Shown piece after piece: positions 970 to 26,395 of a stretch of 64,000 nucleotides of DNA. Every line of letters starts with the position of its first letter. Position 1 is the first letter of the stretch. The notes under the pieces were generated by a model. The model was not told the DNA's origin and did not search any database. It saw only the letters and a list, made by a program, of their open reading frames with translations. This DNA comes from Mytilus californianus (taxonomy: Eukaryota): the NCBI RefSeq assembly GCF_021869535.1, contig NW_026262701.1, forward strand, positions 84,258,001-84,322,000, given 5' to 3'. The position numbers and the translations under genes were made by a program.

Positions 970-2576
970 TCATTACATTAATCTTATTCACATTGACGAA
1001 ATTTGGTTTGTGCACTTTACCTAAGCAAACATCACCTATAATTACCCAACCGAAAAAGAGCTCCTGGCCAAATGGCGTGCCCTTCGGTCCTGTCAACTGT
1101 TTATACACGTGGTGCGCTTCTAGGACATCTCTGCCAATTAAAAGTTGAATGTCTATATTCGGATTCAAATCTAACATTTGATGAGCTATCTCCTGTAAAT
1201 GGGGATAGGATTTTGCTATATCGGGAGTCGGAATTTCTGATTTTTCGTCTGAGATTGCACTGCATTCTATTACTGTGTTTCAAGTTTTCCATTACCAGAC
1301 AATGACTCAATTATCAGACTTTCTGCGCATCTACCGCTCATAATGGTGCGCCCAGCGCAAGATGACATAGTATACTGAGTGGCTGATGTATTTATACCTA
1401 ACTGATCGAACAGCTCTGTCTTAGCAAGAGTCCTGTTACTTTGGTCGTCCAATATAGCGTACAAATAAACGGCTTTATCTGGGAAGTTCTTCAGGTACAC
1501 ATGGACCTGAACGGTTTTTTCCACATGATTTACCACTAAATCCACATAATGACGTGCACTTGGATCACAACGTATGATCATCAGCATTTTGCGATGTTTC
1601 AGATGATTTCTCCCCGCCGTCAGGAGAATTAGATTTTGCAGAAAAATGCATAGCGGTAATATGACAACTACTTCCACAATGTTCACATTTAACTGTCACG
1701 GTACAATTTCTTGACATATGTGTTGTCGAATGACAGCATTTGAAACAAATCTTATTGTCCTTCAGGTATGATATTTTCTACGTTCTTCATAAGTCTTTGC
1801 TTTGAAAGCTCGACAAGTATTCAAATTTTGATTGGCTTTATGAATAGGACAACGAACAGCCTCTTTCTCTTCGTTCTGTTTCAGATTCACATCCGTTTTT
1901 CGGTTAAAAGCAGACGTTGCGCTATGGTTAACTTTTCGAGTATCATTTGTTTTTTTTTAGAATATGTCGTTTCAGTATTTTTATAAATAAAGGCAGGATC
2001 GTTTTTGACAGCACTAACCTCTCTGATAAATTTCACAAAATACGAAAAAGGTGGAAATGGTACATTGTTTCTCAGTTTGTATTGCATTGCGATGCGCGTG
2101 TTGTCCACTTCTCTTGTATACTGTACGGTAATTTTTCCACGATTAGTAAAACACCAGAGGAAGAGTCGAAATATGACAATGAATTCGAAAATATCTCATT
2201 CTCCTTCGAAGATTCGATTTGTGTGAGTATATCCAATAGTTCATAAAGTCGACTATGATCCTTGTTTGTTAATTTTGGAAACTTCTGTAGTTTTGTTTTA
2301 ATTGCCTCCTCTACCATCTCCGGTCTACCATAGCGTTCGTCGAGGCGCTCCCATATACGACAAAGACCAGTATTTGGATTGTTCACATTCGACGCACGAA
2401 TATTTTGCGAAAACTTAGAAGATTCACGGCCGAGCCATTTTACTATTAAGTCCATTTCTTCGAAAGCCGTAACTGAGAGTTCTTCTTAAATACTTTTAAA
2501 AGTAGCTTTCCATGAAGCGTAAGTTTCCTGACAGTCATCAAAGTTCTGAAACCTAGAAAGTAATAAATCTTTCTTT
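970..2576 (-). pseudogene. BEL/Pao gag C-terminal part, zinc knuckle and aspartic protease
   Basis: ORFs 2072-2455, 1887-2108, 1270-1686 and 926-1177 carry the gag, ILDDQS protease and GWVIIG motifs, split by stops and frameshifts. Confidence 0.88.
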
Positions 2577-2578
2577 AA

Positions 2579-3677
2579 CAAGAGTGCATACGCTGAAATG
2601 TCTCGCCTTCTTAACTAATCACTGATATTATGTTGATAGTCCTAAATAAAAAGCTTTATTACAACTGTCACATAAACTTAACATTAACCAAGAAAACTAA
2701 ACATTGACCAATGAACCATGAAAATGAGGTCAAGGTCAGATGAACCATGCCAGGCAGGCATGTACAACTAACAATTCTTCCATACAACAAATATAGTTGA
2801 CCTATTGCTTATCATGCTTATAGTTCAAGAAAAACAGACCAAAACACAAAAACTTAACACTGACCAATGAACTGTGAAAATGAGGTCAAGGTCAAATAAA
2901 ACCTGTGCGACTGACATATAGATCATAAAATATTTCCAAACACCAAATATAGTTGATCTATTGCATATAGTATTAGAAAAAAAGACCAAAACTCAAAATC
3001 TTAACTTTGACCACTGAACCATGAAATGAGGTCAAGGTCAAATGACACCTGCCAGCTAGACATGTACACCTTACAATCATTCCATAAACCAAATATAGTA
3101 GACTTATTGCATACAGTATAAGAAAAACAGACCAAAACACAAAAACTTAACTATAACCACTGAACCATTAAAATGAGGTCAAGGTCAGATGACACCTGCC
3201 AGTTGGAAATGTACACCTTACAGTCCTTCCATACACCGAATATACTTGACCTATTGCTTATAGTATCTGAGATATGGACTTGACCACCAAAACTTAACCT
3301 TGTTCACTGATCCATGAAATGAGGTCGAGGTCAAGTGAAAACTGTCTGACGGGCATGAGGACCTTGCAAGGTACGCACATACCAAATATAGTTATCCTAC
3401 TACTTATAATAAGAGAGAATTTAACATTACAAAAAATGTTAACTTTTTTTTCAAGTAGTCACTGAACCATGAAAATGAGGTCAAGGACATTGGACATGTA
3501 AGTGACGGAAACTTCGTAACATGAGGCATCCATATACAAAGTATGAAGCATCCAGGTCTTCCATCTTCTAAAATATAAAGCTTTCAAGAAGTTATAGCTA
3601 ACGCCGCCGCTGCCGTAGCCGCCGCCGGATCACTATCCCTATGTCGAGCTTTCTGCGACAAAAGTCGCAGGCTCGAC
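2579..3677 (-). mobile_element. Helentron-associated (HINE-like) non-autonomous element, family A, inserted in gag
   Basis: Terminal hairpin GTCGAGC-CTGCGAC-TTTT-GTCGCAG-AAA-GCTCGAC, a (GGC)-rich tract, about 6 internal 146-156 bp repeats (TGAGGTCAAGG at 2725, 2881, 3027, 3174, 3320, 3476) and an end ...GCACTCTTG. It sits in a TT (AA) site. Confidence 0.8.
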
Positions 3678-3682
3678 AATAA

Positions 3683-4751
3683 AAACTTAGTCAAGTCGAA
3701 CACTACAGACTGATCATGTTTTGGTGGCAGTTGTGGCTGAGTAAATTCAAAATCAGCTGCACACGGATTTATGGTTTGTTTTGTTTGAACTTCTGGTTTT
3801 ATATCTTCAGCTATCGATCTATCCAAATCATCAACTTCATATTTCGGCAAATTCATTAGCGTAGGATTCATGTTAAAATGGTTCCGAGATGCCGGGGTAT
3901 GCGAACTTAAATTATCAAGATTCTTCGGAATAACTTGTGGAACATTGTTATTCTTGTCTTGAGTTCTGAGTTGTTCTACTTCTTTAAATTGTTCATTCAC
4001 ACATTTCTCTTGTTAGTGTCATTTTCACTTTTTCTAATGGCTCTTTGTCTTCTTGTAACGACAACGATCTTTTATCGCTCTCGGCCTCTTCTAAAACTTT
4101 GACCTCGACCTCTGCGACTGCGGTATCTGTCTGTTGTTTAAGCAGTGCTAAATCTGCATCAACTTCAGCCTGTTCATGATCCCTTAAAGCCTTAAGCTGT
4201 ATTTCTAATTCACTTAATCTTGCTTTTTGCTTAATTAATTTTGTTTGTTGCTCAAAATATTGTAACTTTATTCGCATCAGCTGTTACACGTTTCTGAGCT
4301 ATAACCGAACTCGAAATAGATCCACTTTTACCACTATTGTTTGAACGGACAGACTGCATAGGAGCTACTGACATTGTTTCGGCTGCGGTTAATTTCAATG
4401 TCTTAATTGGTTGTATTGTATTGTCAATTATTTCAGTGCACTTTTTAAACTCCTTCTTAAAAGCGGATAATGTTTCATTACACTGTCTTCACTATTTTTG
4501 CGTGTTCAAAACTGAATATAATTATCTGAGTTTTCACAATATTTTTCACGGAACTTTTTCTCTAGTTTGCGTAGAGGTTTTAACTCCTTCGGGCAATCTG
4601 TAAATTCTTCTAGTAAATTTTCAACAGCTTCCCACGACCCGTCAATTCGCTTAAGGTACTTTACCTTGCGTGATTCATAAAGATCTTGATCTTTCTCTGT
4701 CATCTTATGTTCATGTGTCGTCTCAGACGGAAGGGGTTGTGATTGTGCCAT
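3683..4751 (-). pseudogene. BEL/Pao gag N-terminal part (coiled-coil, frameshifted)
   Basis: ORFs 4506-4751, 3993-4277 and 3584-4000 are successive frames. The FDLTKFLL codons rejoin KKDLLLSRF across the 2579-3677 insertion. Confidence 0.75.
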
Positions 4752-8941: not shown

Positions 8942-9482
8942 TAGAGAGTGGTAAAAGGGAGGGTCAGAACACGGAAACACGTGAAATAACAAATCGAAAA
9001 AACGTTGCACGAAAAAAAAACACTCTGGAAAAACGAAACCAATGAATAAAATCGTAAATATTAAAGAAAAAAGTACCAAAAGTTATTACTCAGCCGTTCT
9101 TGGAGATCATGCAGTCATTATAAATGGACATGGCGACCCTGCATTTGGTCACCTTTTAGCGTCCGTTAGTTGCATCCGATTTATCATAGTAATACAATAG
9201 GCTATTAATAAATATCTTGGGACCAGTTAATTAGTTAATAATTTAAAACAATATATTTGGGTTGACTTTGAATTAGTCCCGGATTACTTTTTAATCAAAT
9301 GCGGGACAAGCACGAGAAAATAAGAGTACCGACACGAAACACGGAAAATAATTTAGGGAAAACACAAAGCACGCACATCGAACCAAACACGAGAAAACGA
9401 GGAATAAAACGTCGAAACACGGAAACACTTGAAATAAAAAGGCCGAAAACGTTGCACGAAAATAATCCTTTACCACCCTCTA
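8942..9482. mobile_element. MITE-like element with short TIRs and AACACG-rich internal repeats
   Basis: Left end TAGAGAGTGGTAAAAGG; right end CCTTTACCACCCTCTA. An ACACGGAAACAC.TGAAATAA...AAACGTTGCACGAAAA block occurs near both ends. Confidence 0.55.
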
Positions 9483-10396
9483 AATAGGCCATACTAGATG
9501 TCGACACCTCACATTAGAACTTAAGTAGATAGTCAATTTCGTTTGCAGGGTTAAAGAAATCTTCAGCTTGCTCTAATTTGCCTGTGAAGACCATAAAACC
9601 GTCATCCCTATTGACGGTGTAATTTGATGTTTTCACTCCATTGGAACTTATCTAAGATTTTAATTAATAGGGCAGACAGATGCAGATCTGTGCATGTTTG
9701 TTACAATGGGCGCTCCTATAATGTGTTTGTATAACACGTTTTGTCTTTTTTTTTTTAAAAACAACTTGTTTATATAATAACCACTGTCAATGAAAACTAT
9801 ATTGTCATTTTTTTCATTGATGCATAAAGTGGAAATAACCATCCGTTCTCTTTAAAAGGGAGATAACAAAAAAAAGCTAAATTTTCATTATAAAAATAGT
9901 TTTGGATTTGGAAAATATACATATATATATATCATACCTCTATTTTGAGTTTAAGCAGCATCCTACTGACCAGCAAACTAGCAATGCATACCAATGTATG
10001 TAAAATCCAGCATCCCATTAACCAGCAGTAGTCAACCAGTGTACCAATTCAGCCTTCTTCTGACCAGCAGCAGTCAACTTGTGTATATTATCATACTTCA
10101 TTTTGTTGAGTGTAAAACTATTCAAAACAGCTGATTGCATTTTCAAAATGATTTTTGATAATAACAGTTTGAAAAATGAAATGCTATTTTGAGAATGATT
10201 CTAGTGGATATGTAGAATTTTAGCTTCATCTATGTAAATGTAGTAACTAAAAAAGAATTATGTTAATAAGAAAGAACATTATGTACTTTATCATGAAAAA
10301 TGAGACTGTGACTGTTTCAATAAAAACATAATGAACATGGCACAGATGATTCTAGAAAAGCCCTTCATCAACACCAAATTTATAAAATTTGATTAG

Positions 10397-10688
10397 AACA
10401 AGAATGTGTCCATAGTACACGGATGCCACACTCGCACTGTCATTTTTTATATGTTCAGTCTACCGTGGGGTCAAAACTCTAATTTGGCATTAAAATTAGA
10501 AATATCATATCATAGGGAACATGTGTACTAAGTTTCAAGTTGATTGGACTTCAACTTCATCAAAAACTACCTTGACCAAAAACTTTTATCCTGAAGCGAG
10601 ACAGACGGACGGACGGACGGACGGACGGACGGACGAACGGACGAACTGACGCACAGACCGAAAAACATAATGCCCCTAGGTGGGGCTT
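10397..10688 (-). mobile_element. HINE-like short element with (GGAC)n microsatellite
   Basis: AACAAGAATGTGTCCATAGTACACGGATG start, a (GGAC)n tract at ~10606-10645, and a GCCCCTAGGTGGGGC hairpin at the other end. Confidence 0.7.
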
Positions 10689-12116
10689 AAAAAAGGATTA
10701 CCTGGTTTGTTATGCGATCATAAACCATTATTAGGTGATATTAAACAATTATTGACTTTTGATCAGATTGATACAAATAGATTATGGAGAGTTTTTCAAA
10801 CGAGTAGCGTGATATGAAAACTTATCACTGAAAAAGATCAAAGCAAAATTTACGAAAAAATTTATCAACCTCAGATATACGATATTTGCTAAGGCCAACA
10901 CCATACCACTGGGGTTGATAAAATCTGAAATTGGAACACTTTTATGATAGGTATTGATTACTAGTATTTCAATATATAATCTATTGAGTTAATCTATTGA
11001 GTTATATATATATATATATATATAATATATGTGTAAATCTTCATAAATAACTAAATAACTTGTTAAAAAGCTGCGGTCATCCAAAAAATTATATTGTTTA
11101 CTTTGTCAGACAAAAAATATCTGACCATAACCATGATAACATAACAACATGTTGTACAATAAGCTGCTTCGCATCAAATTTTAAGTTTTAATTATTTTTG
11201 CAGACTTAAATAATTAACAAACCAAGAATGTCACCTGATTTTCTTTCTCATGCATGTGAGTTGCTTACATGTAGTTTAAGTCGAAATGATTTACCTCTCC
11301 ACAGATTCAGGTTTTCGCTCTGGGACCGTTGCCCCATTTGTTTTGGGGTATTTAGGTTTTTATATACCTCTGATATTTTATTCTCAAATAAATATATATC
11401 TCAAAGGTTCGTGAAAAAAAAACCAAGCAAAAAATGATAATCTGGTAGGAGCAATTCAACATAAATATCACATTTTGTAACCAGACTCAAGTTGGCTGCC
11501 ACTTTTAGCAGCCAATCCAGATAGCAGCCACTTTTTTCCAGCAGCCAATTTTGATGATATGTCTAAAAACCCAAAAATTATAACAGAGTCAAACGTTCCA
11601 AAAATCTCAAAATCTAAGTTAAATGTAATTTAACAGCGGAATTCGACAATTTCACGGCTTGTAGTGATTCTCAAAGGATTTCAGTCCATTTTTAATACCA
11701 ATAATGATAGTAGCCACCTTTTTTCGAAATTCTAGCTACCAATACGATATATATTGTTTTTTAACGTCTAAATGACCGGAGATGTTCAGCCTTTTTTGTT
11801 GGACAAACCAACTCCAATGACGTCAGTAACTGAAAGAACTTACTAACCTGATTTCTAAATCCCGGAAATCGTTTTATGACCCCTTTAAGCTGTCGTAAAT
11901 TCTCGTTGTCGAATATAAACCATTATGTCAGTTGCATAATTCTTTATGTAAAATATAGTTTTATCAATAAAACAACATTTAAGATGTATTTTGTATGCAA
12001 TATTTCTTAAATCAATAAAAAAAATATCCTAAGGGCTAGAAACATTTGAAAAATATAAATTGAAATATTTATGGAAAGCCCCCTTCTACCCCAAAAAATG
12101 TATAGTGGAAACCTAC

Positions 12117-13392
12117 CAACTTTGAACGCCAATAATTTTCTAATGGAATGGGCCTAACTCCCAAAAAATCATTCCAGTGTGGCCATCCCCAAGTTATTAC
12201 CTTTCATTTGAGCCATGTCCGGTGGCGAACTTTACCGTACGGATCTGGCGAGGCTTACCGAAAGAATGTAGGTTGTATACGTATTTTTTTCCTTAATAGC
12301 AACTTTGAACGCCAATAATTTTCGAATGGGCCTAACTCCTAAAAAATCATTCCAGTGTGGCCATTCCTAAGTTATTACCTTTCATTTGAGCCATGTCCGG
12401 TGGCAAACTTTACCGTACGGAGCTGGCGAGGCTTACCGAAAGAATGTAGGTTGTATACGTATTTTTTTCCTCAACAGCAACTTTGAACCCCAACAATTTT
12501 CGAATGGGCCTAACTCCCAAAAAATCATTCCAGTGTGGCCATCCTTAAGTTATTACCTTTCATTTGAGCTATGTCCGGTGGCAAACTTTACCGTACGGAG
12601 CTGGCGAGGCTTTCCGAAAGAATGTAGGTTGTATACGTATTTTTTTCCTTAATAGCAACTTTGAACGCCAACAATTTTCGAATGGGCCTAACTCCAAAAA
12701 AATCATTCCAGTGTGGCCATCCCCAAGTTATTACCTTTCATTTGAGCCATGTCCGGTGGCGAATTTTACCGTACGGAGCTGGCGAGGCTTACCGAAAGAA
12801 TGTAGGTTGTATACGTATTTTTTTCCTTAACAGCAACTTTGAACCCCAACAATTTTCGAATGGGCCTAACTCTCAAAACATCATTCCAGTGTGGCCATCC
12901 CTAAGTTATTACGTTTCATTTGAGCTATGTCCGGTGGCGAACTTCACCGTACGGAGCTGGCGAGGCTTACCGAAAGAATGTAAGTTGTATACGTATTTTT
13001 TTTCTTAATAGCAACTTTTAACCCCAACAATTTTCGAATTTGCCTAACTCCCAAAACATCATTCCAGTGTGGCCGTCCCCAAGTTATTACCTTTCATTTG
13101 AGCCATGTCCGATGGCGAACTTTACCGTACGGAGCTGGCGAGGCTTACCGAAAGAATGTAGGTTGTATACGTATTTTTTTCCTTCACAGCAACTTTGAAC
13201 CCCAACAATTTTCGAATGGGCCTAACTCCCAAAAAATCATTCCAGTGTGGCCATCCCCAAGTTATTACCTTTTATTTGAGCCATGTCCGGTGGCAAACTT
13301 TACCGTACGGAGCTGGCGAGGCTTACCGAAAGAATGTAGGGTGTATACGTATTTTTTCCCTTAACGGCAACTTTGAACCCCAACAATTTTCG
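12117..13392 (+). repeat. 178-bp tandem array, left arm (~7.2 units)
   Basis: CAACTTT at 12117, 12300, 12478, 12656, 12834, 13012, 13190 and 13368. Confidence 0.97.
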
Positions 13393-14578
13393 TATGGTAA
13401 AGTTCGCCACCGGACATGGCTCAAATGAAAGGTAATTACTTGGGAATGGCTACACTGGAATGTTTTTTTGGGAGTTAGGCCCATTTGAAAATTGATGGGG
13501 TTCAAAATTGCCGTTAAGGGAAAAAATACGTATACACCCTATATTCTTTCGGTAAGCCTCGTCAGCTCTGTACGGTAAAATTCGCAACGGGACATGGCTC
13601 AAATGAAAGGTAATAACTTGAGAAAGGCCAAACTGGATTGATTTTTTGGAAGTTAGGCCCATTCGAAAATTGTTGGGGTTCAAAGTTGCTGTTAATGAAA
13701 AAAATACGTCTACAACCTACATTCTTTCGGTAAGCCTCGCCAGCTCCGTACGGTAAAGTTCGCCACCGGACATAGCTCAAATGAAAGGTAATAACATGGG
13801 AATGGCCACACTGGAATGATTTTTTGGGAGTTAGGCCCATTCGAAAATTGTTGGGGTTCAAAGTTGCCGTTCAGGGAAAAAATACGTATACACCCTACAT
13901 TCTTTCGATAAGCCTCGCCAGCTCCGTACGGTAAAGTTCGCCACCGGACATGGCTCAAATAAAAGGTAATAACTTGGGGAAGGCCACACTGGAATGATTT
14001 TTTGGAAGTTAGGCCCATTCGAAAATTGTTGGGGTTCAAAGTTGCTGTTAATGAAAAAAGTACGTATACAACCTATATTATTTCGGTAAGCCTCGCCAGC
14101 TCCGTACGGTAAAGTTCGCCACCGGACATGGCTCAAATGAAAGGTAATAACTTGGGAATGGCCACACTGGAATGATTTTTTGGGAGTTAGGCCCATTCGA
14201 AAATTGATGGGGTTCAAAATTGCCGTTAAGGGAAAAAATACGTATACACCCTACATTCTTTCGGTAAGCCTCGTCAGCTCTGTACGGTAAAATTCGCAAC
14301 GGGACATGGCTCAAATGAAAGGTAATAACTTGGGGAAGGCCACACTGGATTGATTTTTTGGAAGTTAGGCCCATTCGAAAATTGTTGGGGTTCAAAGTTG
14401 CTGTTAATGAAAAAAATACGTATACAACCTACATTCTTTCGGTAAGCCTCGCCAGCTCCGTACGGTAAAGTTCGCCACCGGACATGGCTCAAATGAAAGG
14501 TAATAACTTGGGGATGGCCACACTGGAATGATTTTTTGGGAGTTAGGCCCATTCGAAAATTGTTGGGGTTCAAAGTTG
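13393..14578 (-). repeat. 178-bp tandem array, right arm, inverted (~6.7 units)
   Basis: TTCAAA(G/A)TTG ends at 13510, 13688, 13866, 14044, 14222, 14400 and 14578. Confidence 0.97.
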
Positions 14579-14899
14579 TTAGGTTTTCACTATACATTTT
14601 TGGGGGGAGGAGGGGGGTTTTCCATAAATATTTATATTTATATTTTTCAAATATTTCTAGCCCTAAGGATATTTGTTTTTATTGATTTAAGAAATAATGC
14701 ATACAAAATACATCTTAAATGTTGTTTTATTGATAAAACTATATTTTACATAAAGAATTATGCAACTGACATAAGGGTTTATATTCGACAACGAGAATTT
14801 ACGACAGCTTAAATGGGTCATAAAACGGTTTCCGGGATTTAGAAATCCGGTTATTAAGTTTTTTCAGTTACTGACGTTATTGTAGTTGGTTTGTCCAAC

Positions 14900-15206
14900 G
14901 TTCACTTCTAAGTTGTTATCAAAGGTACCAGGCTTATAATTTAATACGCCAGACGCGCGTTTCGTCTACATAAGACTCATCAGTGACGCTCAGATTAAAA
15001 TAGTTAGAAAGCCAAAACAAGTAAAAAGTTGAAGAGCATTGAGGACCCAAAATTCCAAAAAGTTGTGCCAAATACGGCTTAGGTAATCTATGCCTGGGAT
15101 AAGAAAATCCTTAGTATTTTGAATAATTCATATTTTTGCAAACAGTCAATTTATACAAATGACCATGAAGTTGATATTTATGTCAACACCGAAGTGCTGA
15201 CTACTG
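14900..15206 (+). mobile_element. Dispersed repeat fragment (family C) inserted in the right TIR
   Basis: Absent from the left arm. Contains TTATCAAAGGTACCAGGCTTATAATTTAATACGCCAGACGCGCGTTTCG. Related degenerate copies lie near 27960, 38630, 39010-39230 (inverted), 45980 (inverted) and 58260. Confidence 0.8.
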
Positions 15207-16077
15207 GGCTGAACAGCTCTGGTCATTTAGACGCTAAAAAACAATATTTATCGTATTGGTAGCTAGAATTTCTAAAAAAAAGTGGCTGCTATCATTATTG
15301 GTATTTAAAACGGACTGAAATCTTTGAGAATCACTACAAGCCGTGAAATTGTCGAATTCCGCTGTTAAATTACATTTAACTTAGATTTTGAGATTTTTGG
15401 AACGTTTGACTCTGATATAGTTTTTGGGTTTTTAGACATATCATCAAAATTGGCTGCTGGAAAAAAGTGGCTGCTATCTGGATTGGCTGCTAAAAGTGGC
15501 TGCTAGCTTGAGTCTAGTCATTTTGTACATGTGCCTAACATATTTATGTTTTTAAGCATCCCCCTTTTGAAATTCTCAACACATTTACTATAACATTAGA
15601 ATCAAGGCGGTTGAACCGACCTAGGACGAAAGTACCTAGATTACTACATGATTATATTTGTGTACATGTAAATGCCGTTACCTAAATTATCTTTATATTG
15701 GTGCTTCTATTGAGTCGTGCACTCACAGAAATATATCCTTTGCATGTCAGATTAAAATTTAATGAATGATTTCCTAAACTGTCAAATGAGTTTATTTGAT
15801 AAGAAGAAACTATTCCTAAACATGAAAATGACAACACAGTATTTGTACAGCACTCTTTTACCGTTACCGTTATATGTTATATGCATGAATTAGTGGATTG
15901 GTGGCACGTTCTTTTGTGTGTTGATATGAGTTTTCAGTGGGTGTGGGTGTATATTTGTATTTATCATATACTTGTAGAAAATAATAGTATAATTGTACCC
16001 CTTGATAAAACTAATTTATACATATTTTTATTCATTAAATTTGAAGAATTGTCTTAGCCGTGTGATATGATTTTTGT

Positions 16078-16137
16078 TATCAACTGCTTCCGGTATATAT
16101 CAACTGTTTCCGGTTTATATCAACTGCTTCCGGTTAT
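16078..16137. repeat. 20-bp tandem repeat x3
   Basis: TATCAACTG(C/T)TTCCGGT(A/T)TA repeated three times. Confidence 0.85.
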
Positions 16138-16387
16138 AATCGCATGCCTTTCTTTAACGTAATCGCAAAGCCTATTTCGACGTCATTCTGCCTATTCCGG
16201 AAAATAAACCTCAGTGGTACATTTAAGTGAAAAACATAGCTAAGTAGAATAACAGAAGGAATATTAGGAAACAGGAAAATATATTATTAAAAAACGCAAA
16301 ACAAATAATACAATAAATGAATTTTATAAATTTTTAAAAAGCTTTCATGTCTGTATGGCTTCTGCTGAAGTATATGATAAAAAGAAC

Positions 16388-16519
16388 ATAACATGTCATT
16401 TTTCATATCAGACCCCTTATCAGCCCATGGTCAAAATCATCCCTCGAGCCTGTCGCCTCTCGGGCTGATATCTTGACCTAGGGCTGATAAGGGGTCTGAT
16501 ATGAAAAATGCCATGTTAT
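16388..16519. mobile_element. Palindromic hairpin MITE (~130 bp)
   Basis: ATAACATGTCATTTTTCATATCAGACCCCTTATCAGCCC pairs with GGGCTGATAAGGGGTCTGATATGAAAAATGCCATGTTAT. Confidence 0.85.
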
Positions 16520-19500
16520 AATCTATATATAGCGCATTTGCCATCCTACTATGCAGGAGTGCGCTGATATTGAACGGCGATTCACGCCGTTTACGAATTC
16601 ACGTATTTAATTCACGAAAAGCGTAGCTTTGAGTAGATTAAATATGTTAATGAGTAAGGCGTGGTTATATATAATTTGTAACATTAATGGGTGATGACAC
16701 ATGTCAAAGGTTAAACTTAACTATACTTTTCTTGAATTAAATATGTCAAACAAATAATTGAGCTTAATTTCTATGACAAAACGTCTCTTATTTTCAGAAA
16801 ATGAATTCTTGGATCAGATTTTTCAGTAGGATTTGATTTTATGTTTCATTACATGTAAATGAATTGTTGCCGTGATACTTTCACCAAGGTTCAAAATCTT
16901 GTTCGATGTAATCCATGCTGCCTGCCTTCAAAACCAATAGGACGTGCAGTTTTTAGTTAAAGGTCGTGATAAGAAGGAAACGTTTTTAAAACTTATTGTG
17001 AAGGTTTCTGCCTTTCCCAACACGTACCTTAGCTTGAAAATGATCGATTAATAGATGGACTGTTGATTACGTATGGTCCAGAGATAAATATTTTAAGCAT
17101 GCTCAGTGCACGGGGATATGCATTTGAAAAGTGGCGGAAATGAAAAGACTGAAAATCCAGCGATTTTGACACAGTAAAACAAGTATCCACCGATTTATCA
17201 ATATCACCTCTTTGTTGATAGACCACGTTTTTCCTTTTTGTAGCTCTCCTCGGGCGTTCATTTGCTTCAAGTTTATCGAACCATTTTAAATTTAGGGTTA
17301 GGTTTCAAGTTTGGCTAGTGTTAGGATAACACCCCCACCCCCTTTCTTTCCCGAATTTAGTTTTTGATGAATTGTTGTGTATGCATTTTATTTAAATTTT
17401 TAAGGACATTTTATGGTCATTCATCTGATTGTTTACTAGTCCAAGGAGGCGGAGCTAGAAGTGAAATAACAACTTCTGAGATTGAAGTAAGAGCACTGGT
17501 CTAAGCTCCTCCCATTCTTTGCTTTTCTTATGACAAATGATCAATGGCGGGATTGGAGTGTGCAATAACTAAACAAGTGGCTTCTTTTAAAAAAGAAAAG
17601 CAACACGTGAACCCGAGCCCGCTGACTGGTCATCAAAAAATTATTGTTGATTTTTTTTTTGCTGCTTTTGATTTGAAATAATTGACTGTGAACAAAATAA
17701 CATAATGATGAGGTTAATCACTTTTATTGAAAATATGTAATTGTGTGTAGATTCTTGCACAAGTCAATTGAATGTTAGTTGTAAATAGCAAAATGTATAT
17801 ATATACAGCTACTATTTGAATTTACCTTTCGTGGCTTGGCTATTTTATTTATTACTTGGAAGTGTACATCATGTTTTGTTAATCTTATTGAAAATCCCAG
17901 TTTCTACAAACCGGATGTCTAATGCAAATTGCACAAATCAATCGCAATATAAATCTAAGCACTCAGTTTGCTTCATAATCTGGATGCATTTATTTTATCT
18001 ATCATGTCTTCATATTTTGTTTCCTGGATGCCCTCAATTATTCTTATACTCGTTATTGAAGCTGTCTGTACTCATGGTAGATGTTGTATAGATTAATGTA
18101 AAGTCCAATTTCTACGTGAAGTTAAACCCTGTGGCATGCAAATCATAAAAAGGTTTCGTATTTTTTTCTTGAAAGTAACACACCAGCTTCATTGGGACCT
18201 CTTATATACTGCCAATTATTTTGTTCTCATAAAACATCTCAAATTTTAAGGATTTCCTGAAGTTACTTAAATCAATTCAAATATTCTACAGGAATATTTG
18301 GTTTTGAAGAGTATCTTATTTTCAGAATAAACCCAAAAACAAAAAGAAAAGAGAAACAGCTAGAGGTCAGAATACCTTAAGTAATGATGACCATGCTTGA
18401 AAGTCACACGACAAGCTCTTACTGCCGTGTCCTGAATTTAAATAAGGAATGCGAAACTTGACATTCGCGAGTGAAATTAATATTTATGCATGCACATGGT
18501 TTTCTTGCGCAAGAAATAGTAAATAGAAAGCATACGCACTGATACTCTGGATAAGAATACGCATTTGCGTCAACACATATATTAATCTAGGCTAAAATCT
18601 TATGTTTAATAGTTGAATTCGGATGTCAAACTACCTACCTCAAGTGTTTTGACTCCAGATTCATTGCCCTTTAATCCGGAATTTGGATGAACGCAAACCG
18701 ATAGACTGTCGTGTGAACAGGGTGATATGTATCAAGACATGTGTAAGATAGCTTGTCAACGCAATTTTCATAATCGTACCATATTGCTAAGATTTATATG
18801 CTATAAGGTTGAACTATTTAAAACAAAAACAAAAAAAGAATTGAAATTTAATTAACATACATTCTTGTTAATGAATCTTTTCCAAAAATTAAGAATATAA
18901 TATCAATAAACACAAACTATTTACTGATGGACATTTTATTTATCAAATCAATCTCTTCTTATAAAGTCTTACTTTTCACTATATGAATATATTGCTGTAC
19001 AAAATATAAGCTGAAACTTATAAAACCATATTAAAACAGTATAAAATAATTAACGTAGAAATTAAATTTTTTTATGGTTATTGTAAAATATTAATTACGT
19101 ATTTTGTGAGATGCAAGGATTTATTTTTTTCATTCACTACCGTTCAAAATTTAGATACTAACTTATGTGTACGCATCCTAACCCGAATTATTCAGTCGTT
19201 ATATTCCGCTGATCTACGCAAGTAGGACAGATCGATTACGGGGAGGGACTGAATTATTCGGGTTTTACGCATTCCTGCTCATTGGTGCTCATATGTTGCA
19301 TATAATTTTCATAAATGTATTCACTGTTAAAACCTGTGGGCCATAATACACGTATAACATTTTAAACTATATTCTATTAAGGATAAATTTAGTCTCAGAT
19401 TAAACTTAACAATTTTAATGAATATTTTCTTGGTCTGGTAGTATCTATTAATGAAATTAATTATTTTTGACAGAAAAATCCTATTGTTTAATTATCTTTC

Positions 19501-25099: not shown

Positions 25100-26395
25100 A
25101 ATACCGAATAGAGGAAGTTCTGATATCGTCAAGTATCGTCGACAGATACAGAAACTTTACCTCACAATTAGTATTTGTAAAATATCTTAAACCATACGGG
25201 ACCATCTTGTAAATTCGTTGCATCAACATATGACTTTAAAACGTTAACTATGGATTTCTGAAAATAGACCAAGGGATGAACACATCACATTTCAAGAGTA
25301 CAAATCTACCAAGAGAAATTTCCGTCGGGAATTACGAAATGCATTTCAAAAGCATATGCAAGAGACATATGATTCACTCGAAAGGGAATTTGATATAGAT
25401 CAAAAACGTCTCTGGTCATTTTTGAACAAAAATAAAAAGTAAAAGAGCTGCTTATCAAAGCTTATTGTGACTGAATGGTAGACAATGTTCAACGCAGAGT
25501 GATATCTTAGACGGATGGGCCGAACTCTTCGAGTCAATTTTCAAACAAAATACCGGATCAGAACCGATTAGTGACAAGGAACGAGAGATAAACAAGACAG
25601 TTGAGGACGCTCAGAAACATTTCAAAGGAACATTTTAATACAACATGTACAATGCTAAGCTAAATATTACAGTTAACAAAGTAGGGAAAGTGTTAAAGGG
25701 CCTGAAAAAATAACAAAGCGTCTGGATTGGATAACATTGAATATGAACAATGAAATACGGTGGTAACAGTTTGAGAAATCATATGACAAAGCTATTCAAC
25801 TTAGTTTGTTACAACTTTTATTCTCCCAAATCTTGGAAATCAAGTTTGATTGTTCCTTTATTTAAAGTAGGAAATAAATGCAAATGAGATCCAAACTCAT
25901 ATCGAAGAATAAGTCTATAGCACCGTGTATCGGAAAAGTGTTTGATAAAATTATCGATTCAAAACTAGATTTGAAAAAAGACAACAAATGCTTTCCAAAC
26001 CCGCAGCAAACAGCATATCAGCAGTGTTTATCGTGTTTACATACATCATTTAATATTCATGAATCCATTTATCACCATCTTGAAAGACTAAGAAGTATAA
26101 TAATTGTTTTGCTCGATTCAACAAAAGCATTTGATACGGTTTGGCACAATGGATTGTTGTACACACTGCTTGAATATGGTGTAAATGGTAAGTTAGGGTT
26201 GCTTATAGCTAATATGTACTGGGACGCTCAAAGTACAGTCTTTATAACGGAAAAATCTCACGTTTCTTTCCAGTTTATCGTGGTGTTCGTTAAGGGAGCA
26301 GCTTATCATCTAACTTGTATCTTTTATACATTAATGACTTGTTAGATGAGCTCTCCGACTGTAGACGTGGCATACTCATAACGAACATTCATAAA
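25100..26395 (+). pseudogene. Degenerate non-LTR (LINE, CR1/L2-like group) reverse transcriptase fragment
   Basis: SWKSSLIVPLFK...DPNSYRRISL, Q..AYQ, LLDSTKAFDTVWHNGLL, and GVRQG...LYINDLL after a frameshift. Many stops. Confidence 0.88.

What the first reader, a model, noticed from the sequence alone, without database searches (positions are those of the whole stretch)
11471..15527. 4-kb foldback transposon made entirely of two inverted arms, each carrying a 178-bp satellite-like array
Seen: exact 9-bp TSD CATTTTGTA, ~635-bp unique outer TIRs, then 7.2 and 6.7 tandem 178-bp units in opposite orientation, with no coding spacer. Known: 9-bp TSDs with long modular TIRs characterise Mutator-derived and Foldback-type elements. 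Inference: a vehicle that amplifies and disperses a nucleosome-length repeat (a satellite nursery), and a giant palindrome prone to cruciform formation, breakage and long dsRNA if transcribed. I do not recognise the family.
Basis: partly seen in the sequence, partly recalled or inferred. Interest (0 to 1): 0.8.

Follow-up and report, generated by a model that had tools for sequence, protein, structure and literature searches.

The report
Satellite-armed foldback transposon in a mussel
This 4-kb stretch is a real, gene-less hairpin-shaped jumping gene of a mussel whose two arms carry mirror-image arrays of a 178-bp repeat; it is an old, small member of a family that holds about 1 Mb of this repeat, a design already known from fruit flies.

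Summary
Window 11480-15518 is a foldback element flanked by an exact 9-bp duplication. Each arm has a unique outer part, then 7.0 and 6.7 units of a 178-bp repeat in opposite orientation. An 81-nt loop lies between the arms and there is no gene.

It is not an assembly artefact. Contigs from four other individuals cross both junctions. Two sister copies on other chromosomes carry the same lopsided arms.

The family has at least 264 termini and about 51 candidate pairs of 1.5 to 158 kb. Of 17 pairs checked, 15 have 9-bp duplications, including all six giants of 69-158 kb. The genome holds at least 5,936 repeat units, about 1.06 Mb.

No MULE, FLYWCH or OTU domain lies inside any pair. The family looks wholly non-autonomous. 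Assignment to the Mutator/Foldback group rests on the 9-bp duplication and the architecture alone.

The closest known element is Tetris of Drosophila virilis. This is a new member of a known kind. The scan had already met this family on other DNA of the same genome (s1-337777).

The parts
11471..11479 (.). Left target-site duplication, CATTTTGTA
   Evidence: Read directly; identical to 15519-15527.
11480..12113 (+). Left unique outer arm ('arm A', 634 bp). It starts ACCAGACTCAAG and has subterminal GCWGCCA(C/A) motifs at 11490-11550.
   Evidence: Inverted repeats I12, I14, I16, I17 and I19 pair it with the right arm. All 8 motif matches in the 64-kb window lie in the two arms, seven of them within 75 bp of an end, against 0.72 expected. 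It is 92-94% identical to full-length arms on 9 other chromosome sites.
12114..13397 (+). 178-bp tandem array, forward orientation: a 32-bp partial unit (12114-12145), then 7.0 units
   Evidence: (D1, D3). The end of the unique arm shares 33 bp with the end of each unit.
13310..13390 (.). 81-nt unpaired loop at the centre, itself part of the last forward unit. The switch of orientation is at about 13391-13397.
   Evidence: I1: 81 nt between the arms; fold. The same junction occurs in the sister copy on C2 and mirror-flipped in the sister on C132.
13391..14581 (-). 178-bp tandem array, reverse orientation, 6.7 units
   Evidence: (D2, I1-I13).
14582..15518 (-). Right outer arm ('arm B'), the same sequence as arm A inverted but interrupted by a nested repeat. 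It ends ACTAGACTCAAG on the minus strand.
   Evidence: (two pieces, 93-95% to arm A).
14913..15211 (.). Nested 295-297-bp high-copy dispersed repeat inside arm B
   Evidence: It is absent from arm A and from 6 other copies, and present at the same spot in sister copies. The junction pattern is found exactly 3 times in the genome. Depth there is 20-fold or more above the satellite, and hundreds of contigs have loose ends at 14915 and 15211. The genome search gave 3,642 first-look candidates.
15519..15527 (.). Right target-site duplication, CATTTTGTA

Best explanation
This is a non-autonomous foldback (FB-type) DNA transposon. It inserted once as a single unit, duplicating 9 bp of target. It consists only of two inverted arms. 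Each arm has an outer module of about 634 bp, with repeated GCAGCCA(C/A)TT motifs in the first 75 bp or so, followed by a 178-bp tandem array. The two arrays meet head to head. I infer that a transposase made elsewhere in the genome binds the subterminal motifs and cuts the target with a 9-bp stagger. By the 9-bp duplication and the precedents, that enzyme is most likely of the Mutator/Phantom (MULE) group. After or between jumps, the arrays grow and shrink by unequal exchange or slippage. Recombination between the two arms can flip the centre. Together the family holds about 1 Mb of this satellite in the genome. Shown: the structure, the duplication, the multicopy family, the sister copies, and the array and orientation differences. 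Inferred: the identity of the transposase, the role of the motifs, and how the arrays change.
For: Structure and duplication.
Family: 264 termini against 0 in the control. 167 exact termini give 51 candidate pairs of 1.5-158 kb.
Target duplications: 9 bp in 15 of 17 pairs, 13 of them perfect.
Sister copies: C2:31367570-31370668 and C132:101238345-101242004 share our nested repeat in one arm only. A arms are 96.0-96.7% alike across copies and B arms 95.5-96.6%. A against B within one copy is 93.8-96.3%. The whole lopsided unit was therefore copied to three chromosomes.
Array change: arrays in the three sisters range from 1.5 to 8.2 units per arm. The centre junction is the same in two sisters and mirror-flipped in the third.
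Other individuals: junction-crossing contigs in 4 individuals from 3 studies.
Motifs: all 8 matches in the window lie at the two arms.
Precedents: Tetris, Tm1 and FB share this design and an 8-10-bp duplication (PMC4079207, PMC3169594).
Against: No transposase is linked to the family. None of 122 MULE, 78 FLYWCH and 64 OTU hits lies inside any of the 51 pairs. The centres of long copies hold only BEL/Pao retroelement debris. The one Phantom-type copy I could read has unrelated ends. Only 150 of 465 MULE candidates were scored, and 97 termini with mismatches were never listed, so a partner may have been missed. Two of 17 pairs lack a duplication. The central inversion of this very copy was not seen in long reads, since only short-read contigs were on hand.
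Confidence: 0.85

Rival explanations
1. It is an FB-like shell that belongs to a superfamily other than Mutator (for example P/Galileo-like, hAT or Merlin). Foldback architecture has arisen several times.
For: No MULE could be tied to the termini. [quoted passage not shown] By my own knowledge, Merlin elements make 8-9-bp duplications.
Against: The duplication is 9 bp in 15 of 17 pairs. Galileo/P gives 7-8 bp and hAT gives 8 bp (established knowledge). FB, Tetris and Tm1 all give 9 bp or 8-10 bp. Phantom-type FLYWCH+MULE reading frames of 475-482 aa exist in this genome.
Confidence: 0.1
2. It is two head-to-head copies of a Helentron-derived, tandem-repeat-carrying element (Pearl/MgE/HINE type), the kind already known to carry satellites of about 160-170 bp in bivalves.
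For: Bivalve satellite-like arrays are typically carried by such elements (PMC7492417).
Against: A 9-bp target duplication flanks the whole unit. The arms are inverted repeats more than 600 bp long. Sister copies keep the same centre junction. By my own knowledge, Helitron-type elements make no target duplication; in the oyster Helentron-derived elements each array keeps one fixed orientation.
Confidence: 0.03
3. It is an assembly artefact, or a local inverted duplication formed in place and not a unit that transposed.
For: Palindromes are a known product of chimeric foldback reads. The centre itself was not checked with long reads.
Against: Both flank junctions are present in contigs of 4 individuals from 3 studies. 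The arms differ by 3-8% and by a 297-bp insertion. The same lopsided unit sits on three chromosomes with different flanks and its own duplications.
Confidence: 0.02

Closest known systems
Tetris, foldback transposon of Drosophila virilis (PMC4079207)
   Same: [quoted passage not shown] Duplications are 8-10 bp. There is no ORF and no autonomous partner was found. A short stretch is shared between the flanking domain and the repeat (37 bp there, 33 bp here). The repeats also form kb-size satellite-like arrays.
   Different: The host is a mollusc and the sequences are unrelated. Our copy has no middle or inner domain, only an 81-nt loop. Far more complete copies exist (15 pairs with duplications against 3). 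Members reach 69-158 kb and the satellite totals about 1 Mb.
Drosophila melanogaster FB elements (FB4, FB-NOF)
   Same: Foldback shape, internally repetitive arms, mostly non-coding copies. From my own knowledge, 9-bp target duplication and grouping with Mutator.
   Different: From my own knowledge, FB arms are built of 10/20/31-bp repeats right up to the ends. Ours has a long unique outer module and a repeat of nucleosome length.
Tm1 of root-knot nematodes (PMC3169594)
   Same: FB-like composite arms with tandem repeats, 9-bp duplications, and many MITE-like non-coding members.
   Different: Tm1 repeats are 13-15 bp long. One Tm1 member encodes a Phantom-type MULE transposase, which ties that family to Mutator; no such member was found here.
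Pearl / MgE / Cg_HINE, Helentron-derived satellite carriers of bivalves (PMC7492417)
   Same: They are bivalve mobile elements that carry and disperse short arrays of repeats of about 160-170 bp.
   Different: They have a single array in a fixed orientation and Helitron-type ends, and by my own knowledge make no target duplication. Ours has inverted arms and a 9-bp duplication.

Membership tests
Foldback-type transposons (structural class) | Inverted arms make up almost the whole element and can fold back on themselves | tested here: met
   Arms span 11480-13309 and 13391-15518 with an 81-nt loop. The fold is -406 kcal/mol, z = -62.
Foldback-type transposons (structural class) | Arms are modular and hold tandem repeats of variable number | tested here: met
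   7.0 and 6.7 units here. Relatives have 1.5 to more than 135 units per arm.
Foldback-type transposons (structural class) | Target-site duplication of about 9 bp, showing insertion as a unit | tested here: met
   Exact CATTTTGTA here. 15 of 17 family pairs have one.
Mutator / MULE superfamily (Phantom subclass) | 9-11-bp target duplication | tested here: met
   9 bp throughout.
Mutator / MULE superfamily (Phantom subclass) | An autonomous member with the same termini encodes a MULE (DDE) transposase, with FLYWCH in Phantom | tested here: inconclusive
   No PF10551, PF04500 or PF02338 hit lies inside any of 51 pairs. Only part of the candidates were scored, and 97 imperfect termini were not listed.
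Helentron / HINE (Pearl, MgE) | No target duplication; a single array in a fixed orientation; Helitron-type ends | tested here: not met
   There is a 9-bp duplication, two inverted arrays and inverted arms of 634 bp or more.
P superfamily foldback-like elements (Galileo) | 7-8-bp target duplication; THAP-type P transposase | tested here: not met
   The duplication is 9 bp in 15 of 17 pairs. The transposase was not testable.

The most novel reading that the evidence does not exclude
The family may be a working satellite factory. On this reading, one trans-mobilised foldback lineage creates, enlarges and scatters essentially all copies of a 178-bp satellite (about 1 Mb). Its members would stay able to transpose at 70-158 kb. 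That would make them among the largest clean-ended cut-and-paste elements in animals, and would give a mollusc system in which the birth of a satellite can be followed copy by copy.
Probability: 0.2. Interest if true: 0.7.

Novelty: new member of a known kind. Interest (0 to 1): 0.4.

Why it matters
Satellite DNA is thought often to start inside transposons, but well-resolved examples are few and come mostly from Drosophila. In bivalves the known carriers are Helitron-type.

This mussel family shows the whole range in one genome. Arrays run from 1.5 units in small old copies to tens of kb. Target duplications mark each insertion. Sister copies show that arrays change length and centres flip after copying. 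The family is therefore a usable natural series for studying how a repeat of nucleosome length expands.

Dozens of long palindromes are also candidate sites of breakage and rearrangement. Two of 17 pairs have mismatched flanks.

The particular 4-kb copy in this window is an ordinary, apparently fixed, old member of the family.

Tried and rejected
1. I looked for a transposase inside long copies. Three copies of 10-12 kb share a 7-kb centre, but it is BEL/Pao gag (DUF1759), protease and integrase debris. The same holds for the 47.5-kb and 29-kb copies. The midpoint of another 29.5-kb copy is pure array.

2. I cross-checked all MULE, OTU and FLYWCH hits in the genome against 51 terminus pairs. 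None lies inside.

3. I followed the earlier scan notes on a 49-kb OTU-MULE with satellite arms. No pair of exact termini has that size. A 10-kb stretch upstream of one OTU exon (L069) has no 178-bp repeat and none of our arm sequence. No link was found.

4. I checked a MULE hit 48 kb from an unpaired terminus on C57. The terminus belongs to a 1.1-kb mini-element. The MULE is a decayed Phantom-type copy with its own, different inverted motifs.

5. C88:98632171-98641022 looked like an 8.9-kb relative. It shares only about 250 bp of terminus, carries 540-bp and 439-bp arrays in one direction, and has no duplication, so it is not a clean element.

6. Rfam found nothing in 9000-18000.

7. I found no paper on this family or on a Mytilus satellitome.

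8. I dropped the idea that the 7-kb centre of long copies flips. Their arms carry no shared asymmetric marker, so the orientation cannot be defined.

About 30 further pairs could not be checked for duplications.
Full report
**What is there.**
- A 178-bp unit is repeated 7.0 times on the + strand (12146-13397, 94% matches).
- The same unit is repeated 6.7 times inverted (13391-14578, 90%).
- The two arrays pair over 1164 nt at 92% complementarity, with only 81 nt between them.
- Outside the arrays lie unique arm sequences that are also inverted repeats of each other (segments 87-97% complementary).
- The element starts ACCAGACTCAAG at 11480 and ends with ACTAGACTCAAG on the other strand at 15518.
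- The 9-mer CATTTTGTA lies directly outside both ends.
- The last 33 bp of the unique arm resemble the end of every unit (family D3). The array therefore seems to have grown from the inner edge of the arm.
- No reading frame exists apart from read-through of the units, whose 178-bp length is not a multiple of three.
- As single-stranded DNA the central 901 nt fold into one hairpin of -406 kcal/mol, against -104 +/- 5 for shuffles.

The right arm is about 300 bp longer than the left, because a 295-297-bp repeat is nested in it at about 14913-15211.

**It is real and was copied as a unit.**
- Logan contigs of four individuals from three studies run from unique flank into the arm at both ends (left 11039 to 11505-11510; right 15470/15489 to 15853). 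They stop about 30 bases inside, as expected where a 31-mer becomes repetitive.
- No joint that skips 11480-15527 was among those listed, so I saw no empty allele. This is weak evidence, because contigs drop rare variants and 225 joints were not shown.
- Stronger evidence comes from a junction pattern. The junction between arm sequence and the nested repeat occurs exactly three times in the 1.65-Gb genome: here, at C2:31.37 Mb and at C132:101.24 Mb.
- A partial segmental duplicate at C2:23.07 Mb also carries the nested repeat.
- Those two loci are complete foldback elements of 3.1 and 3.7 kb, with different flanks and their own 9-bp duplications.
- The insert-free arms ('A') of the three copies are 96.0-96.7% alike. 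The insert-bearing arms ('B') are 95.5-96.6% alike. A against B within one copy is 93.8-96.3%.

The difference between the arms is therefore older than the copies, and the whole lopsided unit moved to three chromosomes. Arm divergence cannot date this insertion. The 3-4% divergence between sisters says the copy is not young.

**What changes after copying.**
- The three sisters have 7.2 and 6.5, 3.7 and 8.2, and 7.1 and 1.5 units on their A and B sides.
- The point where orientation switches has the same sequence in our copy and the C2 copy. In the C132 copy it is the exact mirror image relative to the A and B arms.
- I read this as unequal exchange or slippage inside the arrays, plus at least one recombination between the two arms that flipped the centre. 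This is inference from three copies.

**The family.**
- The left arm finds full-length matches of 92-94% on nine other sites. It also finds a second subfamily (about 90% identity, with an extra 175 bp or so in the arm) that forms long elements.
- A 34-base terminus pattern occurs 135 times forward and 129 times reverse, and 0 times in the reversed control.
- The 167 exact termini, with three pairs known, give 51 neighbouring plus-then-minus pairs of 1.55 to 158 kb. The median is 17 kb and the sum is 1.44 Mb.
- I could read the flanks of 17 pairs. Thirteen have a perfect 9-bp duplication (one only after allowing a 3-bp ACC repeat at the tip), two match at 8 of 9, and two have none.
- All six giant pairs checked are perfect: 158 kb (ACATATTTT), 87.5 kb (TAGGTGGTA), 76 kb (TGAAACACG), 74 kb (CATTTTGTA), 73 kb (GGTGTAATA) and 69 kb (TGGATACAG).
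- A duplication shows that both ends come from one insertion. It does not show that the element was that large when it inserted.
- A conserved 32-mer of the unit occurs 5,936 times with up to 3 mismatches, against 0 in the control. That is at least 1.06 Mb of satellite.
- Arrays I could see inside elements reach 8 kb per arm (C154:30.71 Mb, C24:20.85 Mb). One runs at least 6 kb, and by position about 24 kb (C13). Another runs at least 18.5 kb next to a terminus on C144.
- In some arrays the exact-match units recur every 890 bp, which hints at higher-order repeats (C2:14.2 Mb).
- A 25-kb array at C1:84.2 Mb has no exact terminus nearby. Whether the satellite also lives outside elements is unresolved.

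**Who moves it.**
- Nothing inside the copies I read encodes a transposase.
- Three long copies share a 7-kb centre at 97-99% identity. It consists of BEL/Pao gag (DUF1759, E = 7e-38), protease-like and integrase-like debris in both orientations.
- Related debris sits in the 47.5-kb and 29-kb copies.
- None of 122 MULE, 78 FLYWCH or 64 OTU domain hits falls within any of the 51 pairs. The nearest is a FLYWCH+MULE copy 16-17 kb outside one element.
- The genome does hold Phantom-type reading frames of 475-482 aa with FLYWCH and MULE together, so plausible helpers exist.
- The one such copy I could read has different inverted motifs.
- All eight matches to GCWGCCAMYW in the 64-kb window lie in the two arms, seven of them within 75 bp of an end, against 0.72 expected. 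This fits transposase-binding sites, but that is inference.
- The Mutator/Foldback assignment thus rests on the 9-bp duplication and on precedents: Tm1 combines FB-like arms, 9-bp duplications and a Phantom MULE (PMC3169594). I put it at about 0.6 within an overall 0.85 for 'non-autonomous foldback transposon'.

**Comparison with what is known.**
- Tetris of Drosophila virilis has the same plan: a unique flanking domain, then about 220-bp tandem repeats, 8-10-bp duplications, no ORF, no autonomous partner found, a short stretch shared between flank and repeat, and kb-size satellite-like arrays (PMC4079207).
- The bivalve elements known to carry repeats of about 160-170 bp (Pearl, MgE, Cg_HINE) are Helentron-derived, with one array in a fixed orientation (PMC7492417). 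Our element fails that test.
- I found no paper describing this family or a Mytilus satellitome.
- The scan itself had already met the family on other DNA of this genome (s1-337777: 13.1-kb copy, about 200 copies, up to 158 kb). My counts agree with that note.
- That the host is a mussel comes from earlier notes of the scan (s1-287974 and others name Mytilus, the California mussel). I did not verify the species.

**Surroundings.** The element lies in repeat-rich, non-coding DNA. The nearest long reading frames are retroelement debris at 1270-4000 and 25878-26345. The transporter exon noted earlier is 22 kb away. Rfam finds nothing in 9000-18000.

**Verdict.** The object is a small, old, apparently fixed member of a Tetris-like foldback family, so it is a new member of a known kind. 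The family as a whole, with about 1 Mb of satellite and duplication-flanked members up to 158 kb, is more interesting than this copy.

Noticed in passing
window 11471-11479 / 15519-15527 and G000:C99:54657956-54732083 (L029, L074): A 74-kb member of the other subfamily on another chromosome has exactly the same 9-bp target duplication, CATTTTGTA, while the flanks beyond it differ. Among 15 duplications I estimate the chance of an identical pair at about 1 in 1000. TGTA/TACA also occurs in 5 of the 15. This may be a weak target preference, but that pattern was picked after the fact.
   Followed up: partly
window 14913-15211: The repeat nested in the right arm is a very abundant dispersed element of about 297 bp. 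It gave 3,642 first-look candidates, and its contig depth is about 20 times that of the satellite. Elsewhere it also forms short tandem arrays with a period of about 356 bp (for example C99:43269147-43270155 and C165:98694283-98695655).
   Followed up: partly
G000:C1:105355354-105365512, C132:3298138-3309822, C154:2387799-2400166 (L061-L066): Three long family members on different chromosomes share a 7-kb centre at 97-99% identity. It is made of BEL/Pao retrotransposon gag (DUF1759), protease and integrase fragments in both orientations. The foldback element seems to have picked up this cargo and then spread it.
   Followed up: partly
G000:C132:3298138-3309822 and C143:46991780-46997858 (L063/L064, L071): These two pairs of termini have no matching target duplication. 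That would fit exchange between different copies, meaning rearrangement at foldback elements, but it was not tested.
   Followed up: no
G000:C88:98632001-98641200 (L070): The same 250 bp or so of terminus (81% identity) is joined here to quite different tandem repeats (540 bp x 5.8 and 439 bp x 7.9), all in one orientation. So the terminal module is shared by lineages that carry different satellites.
   Followed up: partly
G000:C2:23066230-23069585 (L045) versus C2:31367470-31372167: One flank, the insert-bearing arm and 3.6 units of the C2:31.37 Mb sister copy recur 8.3 Mb away at 98% identity. This is a partial segmental duplicate, not a new insertion.
   Followed up: partly
window 10600-10796: A (GACG)n stretch (10600-10651) and the sequence after it have very high contig depth in all four runs, so another high-copy repeat lies just left of the element.
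   Followed up: no
G000:C57:10520001-10523000 (L076): This is a decayed Phantom-type transposase copy with the best FLYWCH hit in the genome and a MULE domain. It is bounded by its own repeated inverted motif TGTTGGCATTC(A/G)AGGAA, so it belongs to a different foldback-like MULE family.
   Followed up: partly
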